A stretch of 64,000 nucleotides of DNA from Macrostomum lignano (lineage: Eukaryota). Shown here piece after piece: positions 12,556 through 47,050 of the stretch (position 1 is its first letter; the number at the start of each line of letters is the position of its first letter). A program made the translations under genes and the position numbers. The DNA is taken from the NCBI GenBank assembly GCA_002269645.1, contig NIVC01003961.1, positions 1-64,000 on the forward strand, written 5' to 3'. Below the pieces are notes generated by a model. It searched no databases. It was not told where the DNA came from and saw only the letters and a program-made list of their open reading frames with translations.

Positions 12556-13653
12556 ATGAAGTGGCAGCTCGCTCTCGGATTTTTGCTGTGCGCAGCCCTG
12601 GCTGCCCAGGCCGCAAACTCCGGCAATCGTGAACAAGCTCAGGAGCACGAAAAGGAGCACGAGGAGAAGAGGGAGCTCGAGAAGGAGCGCGAAAAGGCGC
12701 ACGAGGAGAAGAGGGAGCTCGAGAAGGAGCACGAAAAGGAGCGCGAGGAGCGCGAGGAACTCGAGAAGGAGCGCGAAAAGCAAGACGACGAGCACGAGGA
12801 GGTCGACCAGGAGCGCGAAGAGCTCGAAAAGGAGCGCGAAAAGGCGCACGAGGAGAAGAGGGAGCTCGAGAAGGAGCGTGAAAAGGAGCACGAGGAGCGC
12901 GAGGAGCTCGACAAGGAGCGCGAAAAGCAAGACGAGGAGCGTGAGGAGCTCGACAAGGAGCGCGAAAAGCAGGACGAGGAGCGCGAAGAACTCGACAAGG
13001 AGCGCGAAAAGGAGCACAAGGAGCGCGAAGAGGAGGACGAAGAAGAGCACAAGGACCACAAAGAAAAGCACAAGGTGAAGAAGGAGCTCGAGAAGGCTGA
13101 GGAGGAGCACGAGAAGCACAAGGTGAAGAAGGAGCTCGAGAAGGCTGAGAAGGAGCACGAGAAGCACAAGTTGAAGAAGGTGCTCGAGAAGGCTGAGGAG
13201 GAGCACGAGAAGCACAAGGTGAAGAAGGAGCTCGAGAAGGCTGAGAAGGAGCACGAGAAGCACAAGTTGAAGAAGGTGCTCGAGAAGGCTGAGGAGGAGC
13301 ACAAGGAGCGCAAGGAGCAGAGGGAGCTCGAGAAGGCCGAGAAGGCCGAGAAGGCCGAGAAGGAGCACAAGGAGCGCAAGGAGCAGAGGGAGCTCGAGAA
13401 GGCCGAGAAGGCCGAGAAGGCCGAGAAGGAGCACAAGGAGCGCAAGGAGCAGAGGGAGCTCGAGAAGGCCGAGAAGGCCGAGAAGGCCGAGAAGGAGCAC
13501 AAGGAGCGCAAGGAGCAGAGGGAGCTCGAGAAGGCCGAGAAGGAGCACGAGGAGCACAAGGAGGAGGTAGAAAAGCGCGATGCTATGCTGGAGGCTCTGG
13601 CCAACCTGGACAGTTTCAACATGCTGGAGGAGAGGGCCGAGAACCTCAACTAG
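12556..13653 (+). CDS. Secreted, highly charged Glu/Lys/Arg/His-rich repetitive helical protein, 365 aa, single exon
   Basis: ATG in GCAACCATGA context; signal peptide MKWQLALGFLLCAALAAQA; GC-rich codon usage with synonymous variation among repeats; stop TAG; AATAAA at 13868-13873. Confidence 0.88.
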   Translation: MKWQLALGFLLCAALAAQAANSGNREQAQEHEKEHEEKRELEKEREKAHEEKRELEKEHEKEREEREELEKEREKQDDEHEEVDQEREELEKEREKAHEEKRELEKEREKEHEEREELDKEREKQDEEREELDKEREKQDEEREELDKEREKEHKEREEEDEEEHKDHKEKHKVKKELEKAEEEHEKHKVKKELEKAEKEHEKHKLKKVLEKAEEEHEKHKVKKELEKAEKEHEKHKLKKVLEKAEEEHKERKEQRELEKAEKAEKAEKEHKERKEQRELEKAEKAEKAEKEHKERKEQRELEKAEKAEKAEKEHKERKEQRELEKAEKEHEEHKEEVEKRDAMLEALANLDSFNMLEERAENLN

Positions 13654-18223: not shown

Positions 18224-19683
18224 TACCAGGTAACTGTGGCAGAATCAGATAAAAGCCTAAAACAGTCACTGTTACTGATTCAATGATCTAAATTTCATTG
18301 ATGAAGTCACTGAAAAAAAACATTTTCTTTTGTCCTCACGTTGCTTCAAAGCAACGCTAGCTTCAGTGACAAATCTGTGAATGATCGCCTCGGCCTTGGT
18401 TCTCTTCATGTCAGTCGTCTCCAGTCTCTTCCTTCTTGGATGCTGCGCATCAAGCCGTTCTCCATCCTTCAGACCGCCACTCCAGGCCTCTGGTCCTGGG
18501 CCTCCTTGGACAAGCGCAGGTTGGTTTGAATTTTTAATTAGCCGAGCGGCTCGGTGTGAGATGGCAAACGAATTCTGTCACGAGAGAATTTCAAAAAACA
18601 GAAATCTAGTTCAAAATCTTTTTGCTTCATTGAATTGTCTTGAAATGACGGAATTTGCTTCCAAGAGTTGGAAACTGACCGGATTAAATGGGTGATTGTT
18701 ATTTTGATCTGAGTCGGGGTGCAGTAAGAGTGGGGATCTATGGAGATTAATGATGCCGGGATCCATTAGGGTTTAGCATCAGTAACCAAATAGAAATAGA
18801 GTCTATATCAATTAGGATCCGTTAGGATTCGTTAGGATTAGAGTGGTTAGGCATTAAGATTGGAGTTGGGATTCATTAAGAGTATAATACTGGTTTCAAC
18901 TTTTATTGCGAACTATTGTATCAATAACTTCTATTGTATCCAGTAAGTTCCTATTTTAGCTTTTACTAGCATACTATATTCAGATGATAAATCTTCATTG
19001 CGAGATACTATAAATATGAATTCACACTCTTAATTGTTTTATAGTGACAAGAGTACCTGACTTCGACAGTAACGGTGTCACAGTGTATTACATCACGCTT
19101 GTATCAATTCAATACGTAGACGGCAGCGCCAAATTAAATTGCCTTCTTTGAGGAAAGAGATGATGATTTTTTGGACAGCTACAAGTTGAATTTGTGCCGG
19201 TTAAACGTTTCAAACATCTCTGTCTTCTAAGCTGTTTCGTTCGACATTTCTAATATATAAACAAAGTAATAATGTGCCTACAAGCAATGCATTGCTACGC
19301 AGGATACCAGAAATGAAAGTGAAAATGCAGTTAAATGATTATATTCTAACACTTCATACCATCTTGAAAGTACGGGTACAATGTAAAACCACATTTGCAA
19401 GCCATAGGGTTTAAAAACATAGCTTACTTGCTGCGACAATTTCTTAATCTAGCGTAGGTTCTTTTACCCCTTTTAGTCCAATCAGGAGCTTTGGAAGCGA
19501 TATTTGCGATTGGTTCGACTACTACCTGAGCAGCGAGTTGAAGTTCGCTGACAGACTCACCTAAGTTGAGAAGCAGTTTACCAACTGTTAACTCCTGGCA
19601 CATTGTGGCAGCGCTTAAACGGCGAGCATCTCGAAATTCGTCTGGAACCGCTTGGAGCTCGCGAATTTTAGCAGCTGCCCATC

Positions 19684-20202
19684 ATGCGCCCGCTAATCTC
19701 TTGCTGGCTCTTTGTAGCCGCTCTTTGTCTGACCGCCGTTGCCGTCAGCAACGCGAACTCCAACCTGGATGAAGACGATGACTACATTGGAGTAGCTCCT
19801 GAGCATGAGCAGCTCCGATACAACTCAAAAGGCCTCCGTAGAGATCTTCGTAAGTGGCAGTACAATGGCGGCATGTTCGGAAAGCGGCAGTACAATGGCG
19901 GCATGTTCGGAAAACGGCAGTACAACGGCGGCATGTTCGGAAAACGGCAGTACAACGGCGGCATGTTCGGAAAACGGCAGTACAATGGCGGCATGTTCGG
20001 AAAGCGGCAGTACAACGGCGGCATGTTCGGAAAGCGGCAGTACAACGGCGGCATGTTCGGAAAGCGGCAGTACAACGGCGGCATGTTCGGAAAACGGCAG
20101 TACAACGGCGGCATGTTCGGAAAACGGCAGTACAACGGCGGCATGTTCGGAAAACGGCAGTACAACGGCGGCATGTTCGGAAAACGGCAGTACGAAGAGT
20201 AA
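19684..20202 (+). CDS. Neuropeptide precursor, 172 aa: signal peptide plus 11 copies of QYNGGMF-G-KR (predicted pQYNGGMF-amide); SIFamide/NLP-10-like
   Basis: Signal peptide MRPLISCWLFVAALCLTAVAVS, then an acidic spacer. The 30-bp repeats at 19858-20187 differ only at synonymous sites (AAT/AAC, AAG/AAA). Dibasic KR cleavage sites and an amidation Gly are present. Confidence 0.95.
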   Translation: MRPLISCWLFVAALCLTAVAVSNANSNLDEDDDYIGVAPEHEQLRYNSKGLRRDLRKWQYNGGMFGKRQYNGGMFGKRQYNGGMFGKRQYNGGMFGKRQYNGGMFGKRQYNGGMFGKRQYNGGMFGKRQYNGGMFGKRQYNGGMFGKRQYNGGMFGKRQYNGGMFGKRQYEE

Positions 20203-20929
20203 ACTTTAAAGAGACGCGAACAGATAAAAATCTTATAATTCCATTAGCTACCGCTTGCAGTGAGCCGCATCAATGCGATGACCTGCGATTCAGCGGGACA
20301 TTCCATGTGCTTGTTGTGCAATACCCTCGGCCTCTAATTTTTTTCTTGGAAAATGACACTTCGATCTCTCTGAGAGAATAAGTAAAAAAGTGTTCAAGCA
20401 CGATGTTCACAATCAAGAGCTAACACAATACAAAAACCAAAATCTTTTGATTGAAGACAAAGCTTGCACAGAAGCATACGTGGTTTGTGTGTTCCTAAAA
20501 CTCAATGTTAATTCCTCAAGTCACTTGACTTTTCTTAAGGTTTGAATCTTGAGCCATCTTCGCTGAAAACATTTGGGAATAGTTCTCTATCCTCAAGTTA
20601 CATAGTACACTCAGCAACATGATAAAGTTTTTCACACCGAAACCAGTAGTCAAAATTTTCTCAGATCTACCCCCAAGTGAGCAACTCACAACCACGCCCG
20701 CGGTTCTGGTCTCAACTGTAGCTGAGTGATGCAGGTTGCGTCACAAGGCCGTAGCTTAGGCTGGTGAGGAGAGAGTGGAGAGTTTTGGCTAGAGTTGAAT
20801 TAAATGTGCCGCTTGATGACCACTGGTTTCGGAAAGGAAACTTTTGCATGTTGCTGAATGTAGATCCTCTATCCTCTAGATGTAAATATACATCCTCTAC
20901 CCCTTTTAAATGTGCATCCTTTCCAATCC

Positions 20930-26072: not shown

Positions 26073-28878
26073 TTATTCCTTTTTCAGCCGCAGCCGCTCG
26101 TTGATAATCTTGCACCGCTGGGCGCACTCGTCCGCGCTGCGGGAGCCCACGGCCACAGCCACCTGATCCCAGCGCTCCTTCGTACCTTTGGGAAATTGTC
26201 TGAGCGCCGCCTCCAGCTTAGACTGCTCAGCCTGACTCCAGGCCCGAGTCCGCTGCTGAGCTTCATCTATATCGTCTTCTTCTGCTTTAACGGTTACGCC
26301 TCTCTGCTGCTGCTGCTGCTTCTGGCGCTTATTTCGACGCCTTCGCTGCGCCCTGCCGGCGCCGCCATCCGAATCGGCGTCGCTGTCAGAGTCCGATTCG
26401 CCGCACACCGCCGCCCCATCGGTGTTGACTTCGAAAGCGGCGTTGAGGCTGGCGGCAGCCTGGCGCCGCATCTGCTGCTCGGCCTCGCGAGCCCGGGCGG
26501 CCACGTCCGGCACGGCGCGATGCAGCAGGGCGGCGATTTTCTCCCAGCGGCCGGGCGTGCCGCTTGGGAATCTGGCAACTGCCTTGACCAGAAGCTGCTG
26601 CTCCGCCTCGCTCCAGGGACCCTCGACTAGAGCCGGCGGAGTCGTTGATTCCGCCTGGTCGCCGTTGCTGACGGCGGCTTTGACTGGCGGAGTCGGCAAC
26701 GGCTGCTGCTGTTCAGCCAGCAATTGCTGCTGCACCTGGGCCAGTTGCTGCTCCCGGCGCTCGCGTTTCTGCTGCTTTCTCTGCTCCCGCCTGCGGGCCT
26801 CCTCGGCTGCGGCTTCCGCTTCCGCTTTGGCCGCCCGCTTCCGTTGCAGTTCGGCGTCGCGCCAATCGGCCAGGCTGTCCAGCGCCCAACGGCAGGCGCC
26901 TGGCGCGCCAACAGCGCAGGCGTAGAGTCCGCGACCGATGGCCAACGGCAGGAGGTCCCGCCAGCCTGGGCCCACTAGCGGCTCCTGTTCCAGCTCTTCT
27001 TCCAGTTGTTTCTGCTTTTTCTTGCTCTTCCGCCGGAATAGATCGTCGAATGCTAGTTTCCTTTCAATGTAGACACCCCACAGGACTAAATAGTGGCCGA
27101 CTGTGAACGCCAAGCAGAACACCAGCATCACTTCCGCTAAGCTCATCTTTCGCCACTTCCGGTAATAAAACATCGGGGTGCGCCAGTCGGGCAGCCCATT
27201 GTCAAGGATCTCGTCGTACCTGGCCAGGGTAGAGGGCAGATGGAGAGGTTCAGACTTGATTCTCGGTTCTCGTGATTGAAAAAAAACTTTGAATCAGGCC
27301 TAGGAGTGATTCTTGGTTCCCGGACGGTTCTTGATTTTGGTTACCAGCCTTTCTTGAAAATTGGCCAACCCCCACAACAGAGTGTACATGCCTGACGATG
27401 TACACCCTGTGTGAGCGTGTGCATGAGTGCGTGCACTGTTTTCAGGATGATGTTGCCGAAGGCACTGCGCCAGGGTGCCCACAGCCCAATTGCAAGTATT
27501 ATTAGTAGAAGTTATTCTGAGAATATCTTATGAAAATTCATTTTCGGAATTGACACCGCCGAGATACTTGCGAGCTGGGCGGATCCCACCTGAGCGCTCG
27601 CAATAAGGTATCATTACTTTAGGCATGAGAAATTTCCAAACGCGTCACAAAATGGGGAATTGAAGTATTCGATAAAAAAGTACTTTTTCACCTGCTGGGA
27701 TCAAAGCATAAAATTTGATGGACTGTTAACTTGATTAAACGCTATTAACCGATTAAAAGGCGTGTCATGTGCGTTACAATGAATATAATCACATAAAAGT
27801 TTTTAGCTTGTCTAGACACTTATATAGGACAATCGATAAATAAAAAATGGGGAAACACAAATGCTTGAAAGTAGACGATTATAATTGTATGCGTAGCTAA
27901 TAACTAGGTATTAGGAATGGGCTATTGCGAGCGTAAACAATCCAATTAGAATCGCCGATGACACCGATTAAGAATCGCCCATGACACCATGAGGTATCGC
28001 CCATGACACCCATGAGGAATCGCCCATGACACCATGAGGTATCACCCATGACACCCATTAGGAATCGCCCATGACACCATTAGGAATCGCCCATGACACC
28101 ATGAGGAATCGCCCATGACACCATGACGTATCGCCCATGACACCCATGAGGAATCGCCCATGACACAATGACGTATCGCCCATGACACCCATGAGGAATC
28201 GCCCATGACACCGTGACGTATCGCCCATGACACCCATGAGGAATCGCCCATGACACCATGAGGTATCGCCCATGACACCCATTAGGAATCGCCCATGACA
28301 CCATTAGGAATCGCCCATGACACCATGAGGAATCGCTCATGACACCATGAGGAATCGCCCATGACACCATGACGTATCGCCCATGACACCCATGAGGAAT
28401 CGCCCATGACACCATGACGTATCGCCCATGACACCCATGAGGAATCGCCCATGACACCCATGAGGAATCGCCCATGACACCATGAGGTATCGCCCATGAC
28501 ACCCATGAGGAATCGCCCATGCCACTATAAGGACTCGATGCCATTAAATCAAACGCACCTCCGCCTCAGAGTTTCATCCTTGAGCACTTCATTGATGGCG
28601 TTGAGTTTGCGGAAATAATCCACAGTCTCATCGTCGTGCTTGTTCACCCGATCCGGATGGTACTGCATCGACACCCGACGGAAGGCCCGTCGAATCTCCT
28701 GACTGCTGGCTTCACGTTTCGTGTTCAACAGTTCGTAGAAATTGCCGTTGACCTCTTCAACTAAGTCGAATAGTTGCAGCTCGCGCTGGTCGAATGCGCT
28801 AACGGAGGGCGAGTGAGATAGCACTAGCAGAGTCAGTAGTAGCGAGGGAAGCGGCCACACCATGCCGATGGCTGCCAT
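26073..28878 (-). CDS. DNAJC1: DnaJ homolog subfamily C member 1 (ERdj1/MTJ1), 488 aa, 2 exons
   Basis: Exon 1 is 28878-28559 (donor AG|GTGCGT) and exon 2 is 27219-26073 (acceptor GCCAG|G); phase 2 matches. The protein has a signal peptide, a J domain with HPD, RRRYDEILDNGLPDWRTPMFYYRK, a TM helix and two SANT/Myb domains (WSEAEQQLL..., WSQAEQSKLE...). Confidence 0.95.
27955..28520. repeat. 22/23-bp minisatellite (GAATCGCCCATGACAC(C)CATGAG) in the DNAJC1 intron
   Basis: About 25 copies. Confidence 0.95.
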
Positions 28879-32129: not shown

Positions 32130-33395
32130 AGGTGGCAATTATCTGGGATTAGAAACCGATTCTCAGAGATGGGATGGCGATTATCTGGGATTAGAAGCCG
32201 ATTCTCAGCGATGGGATGGCGATTATCTGGGATTAGAAGCCGATTCTCAGCGATGGGATGGCGATTATCTGGGATTAGAAGCCGATTCTCAGAGATGGGA
32301 TGCGATTAACTGGGATTAGAAGCCGATTCTCAGAGATGGGATGGCGATTATCTGGGATTAGAAGCCGATTCTCAGCGATGGGATGGCGATTATCTGGGAT
32401 TAGAAGACGATTCTCAGAGATGGGATGGCGATTATCTGGGATTAGAAGACGATTCTCAGCGATGGGATGGCGATTATCTGGGATTAGAAGCCGATTCTCA
32501 GAGATGGGATGGCGATTATCTGGGATTAGAAGCCGATTCTCAGAGATGGGATGGCGATTATCTGGGATTAGAAGCCGATTCTCAGAGATGGGATGGCGAT
32601 TATCTGGGATTAGAAGCCGATTCTCAGCGATGGGATGGCGATTATCTGGGATTAGAAGCAGATTCTCAGCGATGGGTTGGCGATTATCTGGGATTAGAAG
32701 CCGATTCTCAGCGATGGGTTGGCGATTATCTGGGATTAGAAGCCGATTCTCAGCGATGGGTTGGCGATTATCTGGGATTAGAAGCCGATTCTCAGAGATG
32801 GGATGGCGATTATCTGGAATTAGAAGACGATTCTCAGAGATGGGATGGCGATTATCTGGGATTAGAAGACGATTCTCAGCGATGGGATGGCGATTATCTG
32901 GAATTAGAAGCTGATTCTCAGAGATGGGATGGCGATTATCTGGGATTAGAAGACGATTCTCAGCGATGGGATGGCGATTATCTGGGATTAAAAGACGATT
33001 CTCAGAGATGGGATGGCGATTATCTGGGATTAGAAGCCGATTCTCAGAGATGGAATGGCGATTATCTGGGATTAGAAGCCGATTCTCAGAGATGGGATGG
33101 GCGATTATCTGGGATTAGAAGCCGATTCTCAGCGATGGGATGGCGATTATCTGGGATTACAAGCCGATTCTCAGAGATGGGATGGGCGATTATCTGGGAT
33201 TAGAAGCCGATTCTCAGAGATGGGATGGCGATTATCTAGGATTAGAAGCCGATTCTCAGAGATGGGATGGCGATTATCTGGGATTAGAAGCCGATTCTCA
33301 GCGATGGGATGGCGATTATCTGGGATTAGAAGACGATTCTCAGAGATGGGATGGCGATTATCTGGGATTAGAAGCCGATTCTCAGCGATGGGATG
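32130..33395. repeat. Minisatellite, 42-bp unit GATTATCTGGGATTAGAAGCCGATTCTCAGAGATGGGATGGC, about 30 copies
   Basis: Direct reading; it decays into degenerate units up to about 33490. Confidence 0.96.
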
Positions 33396-37452: not shown

Positions 37453-38624
37453 TCACGATTTCGGCGGTTTATAATCTTCGCCATTGAGTCGCATCTGGCC
37501 GGTGAACCGGTGCACCTTGATATTAACCGGCCGTTTGATCATCCGATCGGCGTGCGACCGGCTAGCCAGATGCTGCCGCCAGGCCGCCTCCGAAACGGTG
37601 GCAAAGGCGCAGCGGAGGCAATCGTAGCGGCGCTGCCGTTTGGTGCAGGCGGCCTCGTGCGAGGCCAGAGTCTCCCGCTTAGCTGAGCGATGGCCGCAGA
37701 AGTAGCGGCAGGAGTACAGCGGCTGGATGTTGGCGTGGGCCTGCCGGCGATGGCTAACAATCTCATGGTAGGTGCGGCACACGAACGAGCAGAATGAGCA
37801 CTGGAAGCAGAGCTCTTTATGAGTAGAACAGTGCGCAAAATAGCGGCGCTGACTGTCGCAGGTGAAGCTGCACTTCTCGCAGGCGAATCTAGGCGCAAGC
37901 GGTTTCTCTTCGTTGACTATTTCAATGTCACTGTCGGCGCCGGTGTCTGTTGCGACGGCAGCCGACGAATTCGTGGCAGCAGCAGCAGCAGCAGTGGAAG
38001 CAGGAGCAGACGAAACCAGAGACTGATCAACAAGGCCAGCTAAACTAGCCGAGTGCTTGAGCTCGCAGTGAGCCACGGCAGCATCAGCCGTGTTGAACAG
38101 CATCGAAGCAGCGCAGGCTGTGCAAGCCATCCGGCTGTTGAGATGAAAAGCCAGCAGGTGTTCGGCCAGCACCCGGTCGCTGGGGAATCGACCGCCAGCA
38201 GATTTACAAGCAGCTATGGGACAGCGGATTAACGACCGGGTGGCAGAAGCCGCACCTGTGACAGTTGGAGCGGCTGGAGAGACAAGAACCGTGGGAGGCA
38301 CCACCGGGCGAGATGGTGCGTCAACAATCTGTACATCGTCATCGTCGCCATTGTACACCGTCGAATTCCAACTGACGACATTTCGACTCTGCCTGCTGTT
38401 GATCCCATTGCTATTGCTACTCTGCTGTCTAGCCACATTAGCAACGTTGGGGCTATTCCTAACTCCAATAGTCCATCTGCCATTGCCAACCCCGTGGCCA
38501 TTGTTGCGGATGGCGCTGCCATTGCCACGACTGCTGTTATGGTTGTGATCATCAGTGTCTTCCTCATCGTCAATTATGACAACAATGGGCAGGCCACCAT
38601 TGGGCCGACCACTGCTTGGTGGAA
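37453..38624 (-). CDS. Multi-SIM C2H2 zinc-finger protein (ZNF451-like features); large terminal exon, 5' exon not located
   Basis: The open frame runs from the acceptor CAACAG| (38625) to TGA at 37453. Six zinc fingers: CPIAAC..H..H, CTAC..H..H, CEKC..H..H, CSFC..H..H, CRYFC..H..C, CLRC..H..H. Acidic-flanked SIM-like motifs: VVIIDDEED, DDDDVQIVD, DSDIEIVNEE. Confidence 0.85.
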
Positions 38625-40254
38625 CTGTTGTATGTGGCAAAGACAAAAATAATGCAACAGAATTATTTAATTAATCAAATTTTTAATTAGTATTTATTCA
38701 TATTGATTATATAAGCAGACTTAGGCCTATCTTAGATACTTAACTATTTTTTATGTTCAGATAGAATTAGTAAATATTATATAATGACCAGTACATTTTA
38801 ATAGTATACTATTCCTACAATTGTATATAGTTAATATCATTCATAGCTTTTTAACTTTAAATCTATTGATAAAAATAAATTTAGGCCAGCCAAAATAGTC
38901 AAGCCAATAGCCAATGCAATAAGCCCCCTAATATTTACAGAAATAAGCCTTACAGCTTAGGCCTAAAGTATATAGAGGACTACAAAATAATACATTGCTT
39001 CTTGCTATAGCTCGTGTCTTTAATTTATTTTTCTTTTTGTAATAGCTATATGTCTAATTTAGCAAATTAAGAGATATTTTCTAATTAAAGCAACAAAGCT
39101 AGGGCTAAAAGACCTTTTGCTAACCTGTTGAAAAAGTAGACAATGAGAATTTTATTAGAATTTCATATTTATGGCATGCAAAAACTAAGTGTTGGTTAGG
39201 AATTAAAAAATTTTATTATTGGCCTTATATTTAAACTTTTTATGCTAGAACTAATTATTTAGTAGGCCTAAAGCAAAGTATATTAAATTTTTCAAAATAC
39301 AAAAGCTCTTGATTTTTGTTATATTATATATTTTAACTATAACTCTAGACTATAGCCTCTTTATAAAAAGGAAGTGCTTATCCATACAGTTCCTATGCTA
39401 ATAATTTGTATTTTATTCACATGGATCCATGTCAATAAGTTCCAGCTTATCCCCATGGCAGCTTATTGAAATAGCTAGCTGCCACCATTCAAGTCTATAA
39501 GCTGTGTCAATAATTCCAATTTTATTTACACAGATCCTTGTCAATAATTTCAGCTCATCCCATGGCTAAGATTGTGTAGTTGTTTGTGTTTAGTTTGTAT
39601 ACTGACATTAAATGTTGCTACTAGGCCTAGTATTTTAGTCTTTTTATAGTAACATATATAGCATAGCTTAAAGTAATTGTTATTACAATGTTGTGACTTT
39701 CTGTTAAATTCACAATGTGACAATGTGATTTTAACATCTTGCTAACTCTCCATCCAAAATTGATATTGTCATTATTATTAGTATTATTATCATCATTATA
39801 ACATATTGAATTTTAGATTTTTCAAGTCTTGTTCATCTTTATCTTAGGGTTGTTTGGTCCGTTTGCAAAGCCAGCAGCTAAGCAAATACTCATATTTAAA
39901 ATCAACCCTCTTAATGACAAAAAATTTATCAAAGTACTTGATACCATTTAATATTCAGAAGTTTATTTGGAAGATTTGTAAAATAGTGAAAACAAAAAGA
40001 TGGTTTTTGAAAAGATTTATTTCAAGGTGCTCTATTCTAATAAACTGCTTTGGGGATAAGCTGAAAATTATAGACATAGATCTATGTACTAGCAATCTTT
40101 GCCCCCCAATGGGGGACATCTGGATAGAATCCTTGTTCTTTACAAATAACAAATAGACAGCGAAATAAAGCCTTCATAAAAAACAACAGACATTCCCTCT
40201 TAAAAACAAAACATCCCAAGACAGCAAGCATCCTTAGACAACATTCAAGCATTG

Positions 40255-46291: not shown

Positions 46292-47050
46292 ATGGAAGTC
46301 GAAGAAGAAGTCCAGCGTGTGTCAAAGCAGTAACTGACGAGGAGCCTGCATTAAATTGTGACAAGTGCAAACATTGGTTCCATCGACTGTGTTTGACTGG
46401 TAAGTTTATGCCCTATATTCTGCATTCCATCAACTTAGTGTGTATTCACTCTTAAAATGGAAGAGGAGAAAGAGGGTAGAGGGGGGAGAAGGTAGAGGAG
46501 AGAGTGAAGAGGAAAAGAGGGTAGGGGAGAGAAGGTGGGGAGAGAGGGTAGAGGGGGGAAGGTAGAGGAGAGAGTGAAGAGGAAAAGAGAGTAGGGGAGA
46601 GAAGGTGGGGAGAGGAGGTAGAGAGGAGAGAGGGTATGTGGAGAGATGATAAATGGCTGAAATTGTTTTTGCTTTTTATTTTAGGAGCATCGTTCATTTC
46701 TGCTGCACAGTATAAGAAATTGATGAAGAAGAGTTCTTTTTCTTGGTGCTGCATGATCTGCACTACTCAGGAGGTACGTAGAGAGCGATGCTGAGGTTGA
46801 AGTTGCTGCTGCCGGTGGTGATGAGGTAGAGAGCGATGCCGAAATCGAAGTTGCTGCTGCCGGTGGTGATGAGGTAGAGAGCGATGCCGAAATCGAAGTT
46901 GCTGCTGCCGGTGGTGATGAGGTAGAGAGCGATGCCGAAATCGAAGTTGCTGCTGCCGGTGGTGATGAGGTAGAGAGCGATGCTGAAATCGAAGTTGCTG
47001 CTGCCGGTGGTGATGAGGTAGAGAGCGATGCCGAAATCGAAGTTGCTGCA
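46292..47050 (+). pseudogene. Disrupted two-exon PHD-finger gene fragment with an acidic 16-aa repeat, truncated by the right TIR
   Basis: Exon 46292-46399 (G|GTAAGT) and exon from 46685 (TTTTTAG|GA). Restoring one base at about 46310 gives MEVEEE-CPAC-...-CDKC-KHWFHRLC-...-WCCMIC (C4HC3). A 48-bp repeat follows, readable as EVESDAEIEVAAAGGD (about 6 copies) after a second 4-nt shift at about 46776. Confidence 0.75.

What the first reader, a model, noticed from the sequence alone, without database searches (positions are those of the whole stretch)
19684..20202. Multi-copy neuropeptide precursor for pQYNGGMF-amide, a candidate SIFamide/NLP-10 family member
Seen: a signal peptide, an acidic spacer and 11 copies of QYNGGMF-G-KR whose DNA varies only at synonymous sites, unlike the non-coding minisatellites nearby. 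Established: Gly-Lys-Arg gives C-terminal amidation, and an N-terminal Gln cyclises to pyroglutamate. Recalled: insect SIFamide ends in PFNGSIF-amide and C. elegans NLP-10 peptides end in PF(N/S)GGMY-amide. The core [Y/F]-N-G-[G/S]-[M/I]-[F/Y]-amide fits both. Inference: this is a SIFamide-type ligand in multi-copy form, possibly not yet recognised as such in this lineage.
Basis: partly seen in the sequence, partly recalled or inferred. Interest (0 to 1): 0.8.

Follow-up and report, generated by a model that had tools for sequence, protein, structure and literature searches.

The report
Flatworm multi-copy QYNGGMFamide neuropeptide gene
This is a real gene of the flatworm Macrostomum lignano that encodes eleven copies of a small amidated peptide (QYNGGMF-amide). 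The peptide's core matches the SIFamide/NLP-10 neuropeptides of insects and nematodes, but whether it is a true family member has not been shown.

Summary
Window 19684-20202(+) is an intact 172-aa ORF with a hydrophobic signal peptide and a spacer. It holds 11 in-frame 30-nt units encoding QYNGGMF-G-KR, then QYEE and a stop. The organism is Macrostomum lignano. The same locus in GenBank assembly GCA_002269645.1 carries a 192-aa gene model with 13 copies.

The strongest evidence for coding is a paralogous M. lignano gene (BOX15_Mlig004279) with about 31 copies of FNGGMF-G-KR. Its consensus unit differs from this one at four positions across the shared NGGMFGKR codons, and all four are synonymous.

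The SIFamide/NLP-10 reading is partly supported. Among the amidated peptides I retrieved, the closest cores are nematode NLP-10-type peptides, followed by arthropod SIFamide and IMFamide. One SL1-bearing nematode transcript encodes PFNGGMF-amide, which contains the paralog's peptide exactly. NLP-10 is the published ligand of the NPFF/SIFamide-type receptor NPR-35.

Against it, the canonical precursor layout is absent, the spiralian FFamide motif is not matched, and no receptor or expression test was possible. A flatworm SIFamide homolog, Attachin, was already published in 2022, so the family is not new to this lineage. I could not read that paper.

Verdict: a new member of a known kind, of moderate interest.

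The parts
19684..20202 (+). Complete single-exon CDS of the precursor (172 aa plus stop).
   Evidence: The same locus in GCA_002269645.1 (L001 19259-19837) carries a called gene of 192 aa with 13 copies.
19684..19755 (+). Predicted signal peptide, residues 1-24 (MRPLISCWLFVAALCLTAVAVSNA). Cleavage after SNA is inferred from the -3/-1 rule.
   Evidence: The Kyte-Doolittle 9-residue mean exceeds 2 for windows starting at residues 3-13 (covering residues 3-21) and then falls sharply. No dedicated signal-peptide predictor was available.
19756..19857 (+). Spacer propeptide NSNLDEDDDYIGVAPEHEQLRYNSKGLRRDLRK plus W58. It has an acidic cluster followed by RR and RK cleavage sites.
   Evidence: This non-repeat part of the CDS (19684-19857) is 100% identical to L001, while the flanks are 98.1-98.4% identical.
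19858..20187 (+). Array of 11 units of 30 nt, each encoding QYNGGMF-G-K-R. Predicted products are 10 copies of (pyro)QYNGGMF-amide and one WQYNGGMF-amide.
   Evidence: Within-array variation is synonymous only. The consensus differs from the paralog array at four positions in the shared NGGMFGKR codons, and all four are synonymous.
20188..20202 (+). C-terminal tail QYEE and the TAA stop.

Best explanation
Window 19684-20202 is a functional gene of the free-living flatworm Macrostomum lignano that encodes a secreted prepropeptide.

Inferred processing, from standard neuropeptide biochemistry:
1. The signal peptide directs the protein into the secretory pathway.
2. A prohormone convertase cuts at the K-R, R-R and R-K sites.
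3. A carboxypeptidase trims the basic residues.
4. Peptidylglycine alpha-amidating monooxygenase converts the C-terminal Gly into an amide.
5. The N-terminal Gln cyclises to pyroglutamate.

Each precursor would then release ten pQYNGGMF-amide and one WQYNGGMF-amide. A paralogous gene supplies about 31 copies of FNGGMF-amide.

The peptides are most likely neuronal messengers acting on a G-protein-coupled receptor. The best candidate family is the protostome SIFamide/NLP-10 (NPFF-type) system, with a multi-copy precursor like the nematode NLP-10 precursor rather than the canonical single-copy SIFamide precursor.

What is shown is the gene, its anatomy, purifying selection on the peptide, the paralog and the motif match. 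What is inferred is the processing, the neuronal expression and the receptor. My sub-probabilities are about 0.9 that this is a real secreted multi-copy amidated-peptide precursor, and about 0.5 that it is a true homolog or ligand of the SIFamide/NLP-10 type.
For: Gene and selection:
- The ORF is intact, with a signal-like N-terminus and 11 G-K-R sites. It is the only such ORF in the window.
- The array has period 30 with no indels.
- A gene is called at the orthologous place in GCA_002269645.1, with 13 copies, one of them QYNSGMF.
- The paralog BOX15_Mlig004279 (P0039/P0153; loci L002/L003) has a 27-nt x 31 array encoding FNGGMFGKR.
- The two arrays use different codons for the identical NGGMFGKR. 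There are four differences, all synonymous (P about 0.002, or about 0.011 counting only the three fixed ones).

Family:
- NLP-10 is the ligand of the NPFF/SIFamide-type receptor NPR-35, in vitro and in vivo.
- An exhaustive phmmer search of 1.84 billion representatives listed 150 hits. Besides the paralog, only nematode NLP-10-type precursors carry the xGG[MVLI][FY]-G-KR core.
- P0259 encodes four copies of PFNGGMF-G-KR. Its transcript begins with CAAGTTTGAG, the 3' end of the nematode SL1 leader.
- Among the 214 distinct amidated C-terminal hexamers in the retrieved set, every score of 18 or more to YNGGMF or FNGGMF comes from the paralog, nematode NLP-10-type peptides, or arthropod SIFamide and Bombyx IMFamide. 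The median score is 2-2.5.
Against: - The canonical SIFamide/FFamide precursor features are absent. Those are a peptide directly after the signal peptide, one or two copies, and a C-terminal Cys pair.
- The conserved Pro and the N-terminal extension are missing, so the peptide is only 6-7 residues long.
- M. lignano is a spiralian, yet the motif scores poorly against spiralian FFamide/SIFamide peptides (PNMN[SN]L[LF]F-amide; scores 0-16).
- The phmmer E-values are inflated by the G-K-R periodicity. Clearly unrelated multi-copy precursors score as well or better.
- A six-residue motif can arise by convergence.
- No transcript, peptide or receptor evidence could be obtained with these tools.
- I could not check whether M. 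lignano also has a canonical SIFamide or Attachin gene. The profile search found no named flatworm, but its sensitivity is limited.
Confidence: 0.5

Rival explanations
1. It is a real multi-copy amidated neuropeptide precursor, but it is a Macrostomum- or flatworm-specific family. Its likeness to SIFamide and NLP-10 is convergent, and it signals through an unrelated receptor.
For: - Only a six-residue core is shared.
- Precursor architecture, N-terminal extension and Cys pair are not shared.
- The motif differs from the FFamide/SIFamide of other spiralians.
- No matching motif was found in the planarian prohormone supplements of Collins et al. 2010, in the spiralian collection of Thiel et al. 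2021, or in JGI metagenome contigs.
- From my own recollection of the abstract of Preza et al. 2022, which I could not read, most parasitic-flatworm neuropeptides lack clear similarity to those of other phyla.
Against: - FNGGMF is identical to the core of a nematode NLP-10-type peptide.
- The closest cores in the retrieved set all belong to one receptor-defined family.
- N at -4, a hydrophobic residue at -1 and F-amide at 0 are shared even with the spiralian forms.
- Nematode NLP-10 shows that a true family member can lose the canonical architecture and become multi-copy.
Confidence: 0.35
2. It is a secreted multi-copy peptide made outside the nervous system. Possible examples are a gland, seminal-fluid, adhesive or antimicrobial product, or a pheromone, rather than a neuropeptide.
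For: - Copy numbers are very high (11-13 and about 31), which suggests bulk production.
- There is no expression data.
- Copy number differs between assemblies.
Against: - The Gly-Lys-Arg amidation and cleavage grammar, the short size and the pyroGlu-capable N-terminus are typical of neuropeptides.
- The nearest relatives by motif are neuronal peptides.
Confidence: 0.1
3. It is a non-coding minisatellite that happens to lie in an open reading frame, like the many other tandem arrays in this window.
For: - 34% of the window is tandem arrays.
- The 30-nt unit is open in several frames.
- Within-array variation gives only two informative sites.
Against: - An ATG, a signal peptide and a dibasic/Gly grammar occur together in exactly one frame.
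- The array has no indels, unlike most neighbouring arrays.
- A second array elsewhere in the genome encodes the same NGGMFGKR with different codons, and all differences are synonymous.
- The non-repeat CDS is 100% conserved between loci whose flanks differ by about 1.7%.
- A gene is called at the orthologous place in the GenBank assembly.
Confidence: 0.03

Closest known systems
Nematode NLP-10 / SIFP-1, the ligand of NPR-35/SIFR-1 (an NPFF/SIFamide-type receptor)
   Same: - Multi-copy precursor with a spacer after the signal peptide and no Cys pair.
- Each copy ends in G-K-R.
- The core is F-[NS]-G-G-[MLIV]-[YF]-amide.
- An SL1-bearing nematode transcript (P0259) encodes PFNGGMF-amide, which contains the M. 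lignano paralog peptide exactly.
   Different: - Nematode peptides carry an N-terminal extension with Pro (for example AAMPFSGGMY) and mostly end in Tyr-amide.
- Nematode precursors in this set have 4-7 diverged copies with individual spacers. M. lignano has 11-31 near-identical head-to-tail copies and 6-7-residue peptides.
- In this gene Gln-Tyr replaces Pro-Phe.
Arthropod SIFamide (xYRKPPFNGSIF-amide) and Bombyx IMFamide (..APMNGIMF-amide)
   Same: - The C-terminal core is aromatic-N-G-x-[IM]-F-amide followed by G-K-R.
- IMFamide shows that Met-Phe-amide occurs within the family.
   Different: - Arthropods have a single 12-residue peptide directly after the signal peptide, then a C-terminal peptide with two conserved Cys.
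- None of these features is present here.
Spiralian FFamide / 'SIFamide' of molluscs, annelids and nemerteans
   Same: - Same superphylum.
- Shared Asn at -4, a hydrophobic residue at -1, and Phe-amide at the C-terminus, followed by G-[KR]-[KR].
   Different: - The motif is PNMN[SN]L[LF]F-amide with a second xxLLF/GLFF-amide peptide.
- There are two peptides per precursor plus a Cys pair.
- Anchored similarity to FNGGMF is low (0-16, against 19-35 for the ecdysozoan forms).
Attachin, reported as a SIFamide homolog of cestode flatworms (Preza et al. 2022, J Neurochem 162:467)
   Same: Same phylum and the same proposed family. It is the obvious candidate ortholog.
   Different: Unknown. The paper and its sequences are not in the held library, so no comparison was possible. 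From the abstract as I recall it, Attachin is a peptide with a conserved C-terminus, not described as a high-copy array.
Echinoderm SALMFamide S1 (GFNSALMF-amide), recalled from general knowledge
   Same: It contains Phe-Asn and ends in Met-Phe-amide. It comes from multi-copy precursors.
   Different: The register differs. The defining S-x-L-x-F-amide positions are not matched by N-G-G-M-F-amide. The receptor is unknown. I treat this as a superficial resemblance only.

Membership tests
Multi-copy amidated neuropeptide precursor (generic) | N-terminal signal peptide | tested here: met
   A hydrophobic core spans roughly residues 3-21 and is followed by S-N-A. This is a hydropathy calculation only, with no SignalP-type predictor.
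Multi-copy amidated neuropeptide precursor (generic) | Repeated peptides, each followed by Gly plus a dibasic cleavage site | tested here: met
   There are 11 copies of QYNGGMF-G-K-R. It is the only ORF in the window with this grammar and a hydrophobic N-terminus.
Multi-copy amidated neuropeptide precursor (generic) | Purifying selection on the peptide sequence | tested here: met
   The consensus units of this array and the paralog array differ at four positions in NGGMFGKR, all synonymous (P about 0.002). Within-array variation is synonymous only. One G-to-S copy occurs in the other assembly.
Multi-copy amidated neuropeptide precursor (generic) | Expression in neurons, with processed peptide detectable | not testable with these tools
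   No M. lignano transcriptome, single-cell or peptidomic data are accessible here.
SIFamide / NLP-10 (protostome NPFF-type ligands) | C-terminal core [FY]-[NS]-G-[GS]-[IMLV]-[FY]-amide | tested here: met
   YNGGMF and the paralog FNGGMF were compared with FNGSIF (arthropods), FSGGMY and FNGGMF (nematodes). They are the top-ranked cores.
SIFamide / NLP-10 (protostome NPFF-type ligands) | Pro-containing N-terminal extension (..KPPF.., ..[IM]PF..) | tested here: not met
   The peptide starts at Gln-Tyr, or at Phe in the paralog, immediately after K-R.
SIFamide / NLP-10 (protostome NPFF-type ligands) | Canonical precursor: one or two peptides directly after the signal peptide, then a C-terminal peptide with a Cys pair | tested here: not met
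   Here there is a 34-residue spacer, 11 copies and no Cys after the signal peptide (compared). Nematode NLP-10-type precursors also fail this feature, so it is not decisive.
SIFamide / NLP-10 (protostome NPFF-type ligands) | Detectable sequence homology of the precursors | tested here: inconclusive
   phmmer retrieves NLP-10-type proteins at E = 1e-7 to 7e-6. Unrelated G-K-R repeat precursors score equally well or better. No similarity exists outside the repeats. There is no Pfam hit.
SIFamide / NLP-10 (protostome NPFF-type ligands) | Activates an NPFF/SIFamide-clade GPCR | not testable with these tools
   This needs receptor cloning and a cell-based assay.
SIFamide / NLP-10 (protostome NPFF-type ligands) | The species possesses an NPFF/SIFamide-clade receptor | not tested
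   No tool here searches the M. lignano genome. The literature gives only hints for other flatworms: a monogenean receptor in the SIFa-NPFF clade (PMC9645230) and a planarian EST whose best hit is a SIFamide receptor (PMC3022928).
Spiralian FFamide/SIFamide | PNMN[SN]L[LF]F-amide plus a second LLF/LFF-amide peptide and a Cys pair | tested here: not met
   The 103 profile hits show this conserved pattern. The M. lignano peptides do not fit it.
Flatworm Attachin | Conserved Attachin C-terminal sequence | not testable with these tools
   The paper is not held and no sequence is available.

The most novel reading that the evidence does not exclude
A basal flatworm keeps an ecdysozoan-type SIFamide core (F/Y-N-G-G-M-F-amide) rather than the FFamide form of molluscs and annelids, and delivers it from two massively amplified genes (11-13 and about 31 copies). 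This would imply that the ancestral protostome SIFamide-type peptide was xFNGG[MI][FY]-amide-like. It would also imply that the trochozoan FFamide form is derived, and that nematodes and flatworms independently turned a single-copy precursor into a high-copy one. Alternatively, the two genes define a previously undescribed flatworm peptide-receptor system.
Probability: 0.3. Interest if true: 0.5.

Novelty: new member of a known kind. Interest (0 to 1): 0.35.

Why it matters
M. lignano is a genetically tractable flatworm model with transgenesis and RNAi, and most of its neuropeptides are not annotated. In GenBank the paralog is listed only as a hypothetical protein, with a gene model that skips most of its array. 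The gene model at this locus carries no family annotation in the data I could see.

If these peptides are the ligands of the flatworm NPFF/SIFamide-type receptor, they give a concrete and cheap reagent: a 6-7-residue amide. It could be used to deorphanise that receptor, to compare with cestode Attachin, which is reported to stimulate parasite motility and attachment, and to test how the SIFamide motif evolved across protostomes.

If they are not, they are one more lineage-specific flatworm peptide family. In either case this is an incremental addition to a well-known class of genes.

Tried and rejected
1. The search for homologous proteins with the precursor found nothing. The word index evidently handles the repeat badly, because the exhaustive search later found the paralog.
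2. Exact look-ups of the 172-aa and 192-aa products found neither in the collection.
3. Rfam and tRNA scans of the window found nothing.
4. Pfam gave no hit for the precursor.
5. Full-text searches for NGGMF, YNGGMF, GGMFamide, FNGGMY, FSGGMY, NGGLF and NGGIF found no peptide paper.
6. The planarian prohormone paper and its supplements (Collins 2010) contain no GGMF, GGLF, FNGG, YNGG or similar motif.
7. The Thiel 2021 neuropeptide collection has no GG[ML][FY]G motif, although one of its files was truncated when stored.
8. I tried to find single-copy relatives such as Attachin with a short motif profile.
9. A profile of canonical spiralian SIFamide/FFamide precursors, seeded with chimeric NGGMF rows, gave 103 hits. 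The one informative hit was nematode P0259.
10. A degenerate DNA scan of JGI metagenome contigs for NGGMFGKR gave 55 loci. All are chance matches in bacterial or phage-like ORFs.
11. Preza 2022 (by DOI and PubMed id) and McVeigh 2009 (by PMC id) are not held. One paper search was wasted because 'Attachin' matched 'attaching'.
12. Rejected as evidence: open reading frames across the array, since several frames are open; a period divisible by three, which is common in this window; and phmmer E-values, which are driven by repeat periodicity.

Full report
**1. What is there**

Window 19684-20202(+) is one uninterrupted ORF of 172 codons from ATG to TAA. It translates as:
- MRPLISCWLFVAALCLTAVAVSNA (signal peptide)
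- NSNLDEDDDYIGVAPEHEQLRYNSKGLRRDLRKW (spacer)
- QYNGGMFGKR, 11 times
- QYEE

Tandem Repeats Finder reports 19856-20193 with period 30, 11.3 copies, 98% matches and 0% indels. The 11 units start at 19858 and are spaced 30 nt apart. They differ at only two columns, AAT/AAC for Asn and AAA/AAG for Lys. Both are third-codon positions and both are synonymous.

The N-terminus has a hydrophobic core (9-residue Kyte-Doolittle means above 2 across roughly residues 3-21), followed by S-N-A. That is compatible with a cleaved signal peptide.

Three nuances apply. The first copy follows R-K-W, so it probably gives WQYNGGMF-amide. The spacer is acidic only in its first half. And two variable sites are statistically thin (P about 0.04-0.09).

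**2. Is it more than chance in a repeat-rich window?**

The window is extraordinarily rich in minisatellites. Twenty-five arrays with TRF score of at least 200 cover 34% of it. About a third of them have a period divisible by three, and this unit is open in several frames. None of those properties proves coding.

What does set this array apart is the combination of features. Of 124 ATG-ORFs of at least 50 aa in the window, only two have three or more G[KR][KR] sites. Only this one, with 11 sites, also has a hydrophobic N-terminus.

The decisive evidence comes from outside the window; see section 4.

**3. Organism and orthologous locus**

The neighbouring ORF at 26073-27173(-) has SANT/Myb domains and looks DNAJC1-like. 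It is 99% identical to BOX15_Mlig009023g1 of Macrostomum lignano.

The corresponding contig of GCA_002269645.1 (NIVC01001785.1, locus L001) carries a called gene at the equivalent position. It translates to a 192-aa version of the same precursor, with 13 copies, one of them QYNSGMF.

Unique flanks of the two loci are 98.1-98.4% identical, with indels. The 174-nt non-repeat part of the CDS is 100% identical. The two loci are therefore alleles or very recent duplicates, and the copy number varies between 11 and 13.

**4. A paralog and selection on the peptide**

An exhaustive phmmer search of 1.84 billion representative proteins returned a 114-aa M. lignano protein, P0039/P0153. It corresponds to BOX15_Mlig004279g1/g2/g4 and is annotated as a hypothetical protein. 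It has its own signal peptide and spacer and repeated FNGGMFGKR.

At its genomic loci (L002, L003) the array is really 27 nt x 31 copies. The annotated model bridges most of the array with a false intron. Two single-G losses in G-runs (AACGGGGGAATG shortened to AACGGGGAATG) break the frame. With both restored, the C-terminal tail is back in frame with the start codon, so these are most likely assembly errors.

The two genes encode the identical octapeptide NGGMFGKR with different codons:
- Window gene: AAC GGC GGC ATG TTC GGA AAA CGG
- Paralog: AAC GGT GGA ATG TTC GGC AAG CGG

The consensus units differ at four positions and all four are synonymous. Since 22% of possible substitutions in these codons are synonymous, P is about 0.002, or about 0.011 counting only the three fixed differences.

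This shows purifying selection on the peptide. Together with the gene grammar, it makes the non-coding minisatellite explanation very unlikely.

**5. What family?**

SIFamide-type signalling is the protostome counterpart of vertebrate NPFF signalling (PMC5818035). [quoted passage not shown]

Arthropod SIFamide precursors all read signal peptide, xYRKPPFNGSIF-GKR, then a C-terminal peptide with two Cys. The Bombyx paralog IMFamide ends in PMNGIMF-GKR (supplement of PMC8557429).

Among the 150 listed hits of the exhaustive search, the only proteins other than the paralog that carry an xGG[MVLI][FY]-G-KR core are nematode proteins:
- Ancylostoma ceylanicum
- Caenorhabditis auriculariae
- Mesorhabditis spiculigera

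All have repeated PFSGGMYGKR. From general knowledge, this is the NLP-10 motif. The C. elegans peptides are AIPFNGGMY-amide and xxPFSGGMY-amide, but I could not find them printed in the held literature.

A later profile search turned up P0259, with peptides ending in PMMNGGMF, LPFNGGMF, IPFNGGMF and MPFNGGMF. Its transcript contigs begin with (CAA)GTTTGAG, the 3' end of the nematode SL1 spliced leader. So a nematode NLP-10-type precursor contains exactly the hexapeptide that the M. lignano paralog releases.

I also ran an anchored BLOSUM62 comparison of 214 distinct amidated C-terminal hexamers from everything retrieved. Every score of 18 or more to YNGGMF or FNGGMF belongs to one of three groups:
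- the paralog
- nematode NLP-10-type peptides
- arthropod SIFamide or IMFamide

The median score is 2-2.5.

**6. What speaks against membership**

- The canonical precursor layout is absent here. That layout is one or two peptides directly after the signal peptide, plus a Cys pair, and it is conserved from insects to molluscs, annelids and nemerteans. Nematode NLP-10-type precursors also lack it, so this is not decisive.
- The conserved Pro and the N-terminal extension are missing. In this gene Gln-Tyr occupies the place of Pro-Phe.
- M. lignano is a spiralian, but its peptides resemble the ecdysozoan forms. Spiralian FFamide/SIFamide is PNMN[SN]L[LF]F-amide plus GLFF/PLLF-amide, with anchored scores of 0-16.
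- The phmmer E-values for the NLP-10 proteins (1e-7 to 7e-6) are not evidence of homology. Unrelated G-K-R repeat precursors score as well or better. Examples are APRFL-, MYSGLL-, GLW- and PLQF-type precursors.
- There is no similarity outside the repeats.
- Nothing could be learned here about transcripts, peptides or receptors.

**7. Prior art**

Two reference lists cite Preza et al. [quoted passage not shown] So a SIFamide-type peptide has already been recognised in flatworms.

The paper is not in the held library. I could not compare sequences, and I do not know whether the M. lignano genes are mentioned there.

No held paper prints NGGMF as a peptide. The planarian prohormone set and the spiralian collection contain no such motif. 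A DNA pattern scan of JGI metagenome contigs gave only chance hits.

**8. Mechanism**

Shown: a secretory-type ORF with eleven Gly-Lys-Arg-terminated copies that are under purifying selection.

Inferred from standard neuropeptide biochemistry:
1. Signal peptidase cleaves near Ala24.
2. A prohormone convertase cleaves at RR, RK and KR.
3. A carboxypeptidase trims the basic residues.
4. The C-terminal Gly is converted to an amide.
5. The N-terminal Gln cyclises to pyroglutamate.

The products would be ten pQYNGGMF-NH2 ([M+H]+ 798.324), one WQYNGGMF-NH2 (1001.430) and a QYEE tail. The paralog would give FNGGMF-NH2 (671.297).

Also inferred are storage in dense-core vesicles, release from neurons and action on a GPCR. 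The best candidate is an NPFF/SIFamide-clade receptor.

**9. Verdict**

My estimates are:

| Explanation | Probability |
|---|---|
| Genuine secreted multi-copy amidated-peptide precursor | about 0.9 |
| True SIFamide/NLP-10-type homolog or ligand | about 0.5 |
| Real neuropeptide, but lineage-specific and convergent | about 0.35 |
| Secreted peptide made outside the nervous system | about 0.1 |
| Non-coding minisatellite | about 0.03 |

This is a new member of a known kind. It is useful for annotating and deorphanising flatworm neuropeptide systems. It is mildly interesting for the evolution of the SIFamide motif, but not surprising to a specialist.

Noticed in passing
window 1-64000: Twenty-five tandem arrays with periods from 2 to 59 nt and TRF score of at least 200 cover 34% of the window. 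Most are purine- or pyrimidine-skewed minisatellites with 1-10% indels.
   Followed up: partly
window 12556-13653 (+): An ATG-initiated ORF has a signal-like N-terminus (MKWQLALGFLLCAALAAQA) and long in-frame Glu/Lys-rich repeats of 42/48-nt units. It has no Pfam hit and may be a secreted repetitive protein.
   Followed up: no
window 26073-27173 (-): This is the last exon of a DNAJC1-like gene with two SANT/Myb domains. It is 99% identical to BOX15_Mlig009023g1, which is what identified the organism as Macrostomum lignano.
   Followed up: yes
window 37453-38646 (-): A Cys/His-rich, C2H2-like ORF has no Pfam hit. It is the same gene as the one called at L001 3445-4632, with one amino-acid difference (Ala/Val).
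   Followed up: partly
L002 5001-6045 and L003 5001-5965 (GCA_002269645.1, NIVC01001722.1 and NIVC01000162.1): The paralog BOX15_Mlig004279 really holds about 31 copies of a 27-nt unit encoding FNGGMFGKR. The 114-aa GenBank model skips most of the array as an intron. Two single-G deletions in G-runs break the frame and are probably assembly errors. Two copies read FNGVMF.
   Followed up: yes
P0033 (BOX15_Mlig004832g1, partial; not in the window): This is another unannotated M. lignano multi-copy precursor, with about nine copies of xMYSGLL-G-K-[KR], giving predicted MYSGLL-amide peptides.
   Followed up: no
L004-L006 (ENA assemblies ERZ23140454, ERZ23140456, ERZ23184192): Short transcript-like contigs begin with the 3' end of the nematode SL1 leader. 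They encode an NLP-10-type precursor whose peptides end in PFNGGMF-amide rather than the usual GGMY-amide.
   Followed up: partly
window 19666-19671 and 20203-20802: The sequence ttttag lies 12 nt upstream of the ATG and could be a splice or trans-splice acceptor. There is no TATA-like motif within 400 nt upstream. There is no AATAAA or ATTAAA within 600 nt downstream of the stop, only GATAAA at 20223 and AGTAAA at 20381.
   Followed up: no
window 32133-33395 and 46778-47049: Two other indel-free arrays have periods divisible by three (42 nt x 30 copies, and 48 nt x 5.7 copies). I did not examine whether they are coding.
   Followed up: no
tool behaviour: The word-indexed protein search missed the M. 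lignano paralog, which the exhaustive search then found at E = 3e-11. Negative results from the indexed search are unreliable for short-period repeat proteins.
   Followed up: partly
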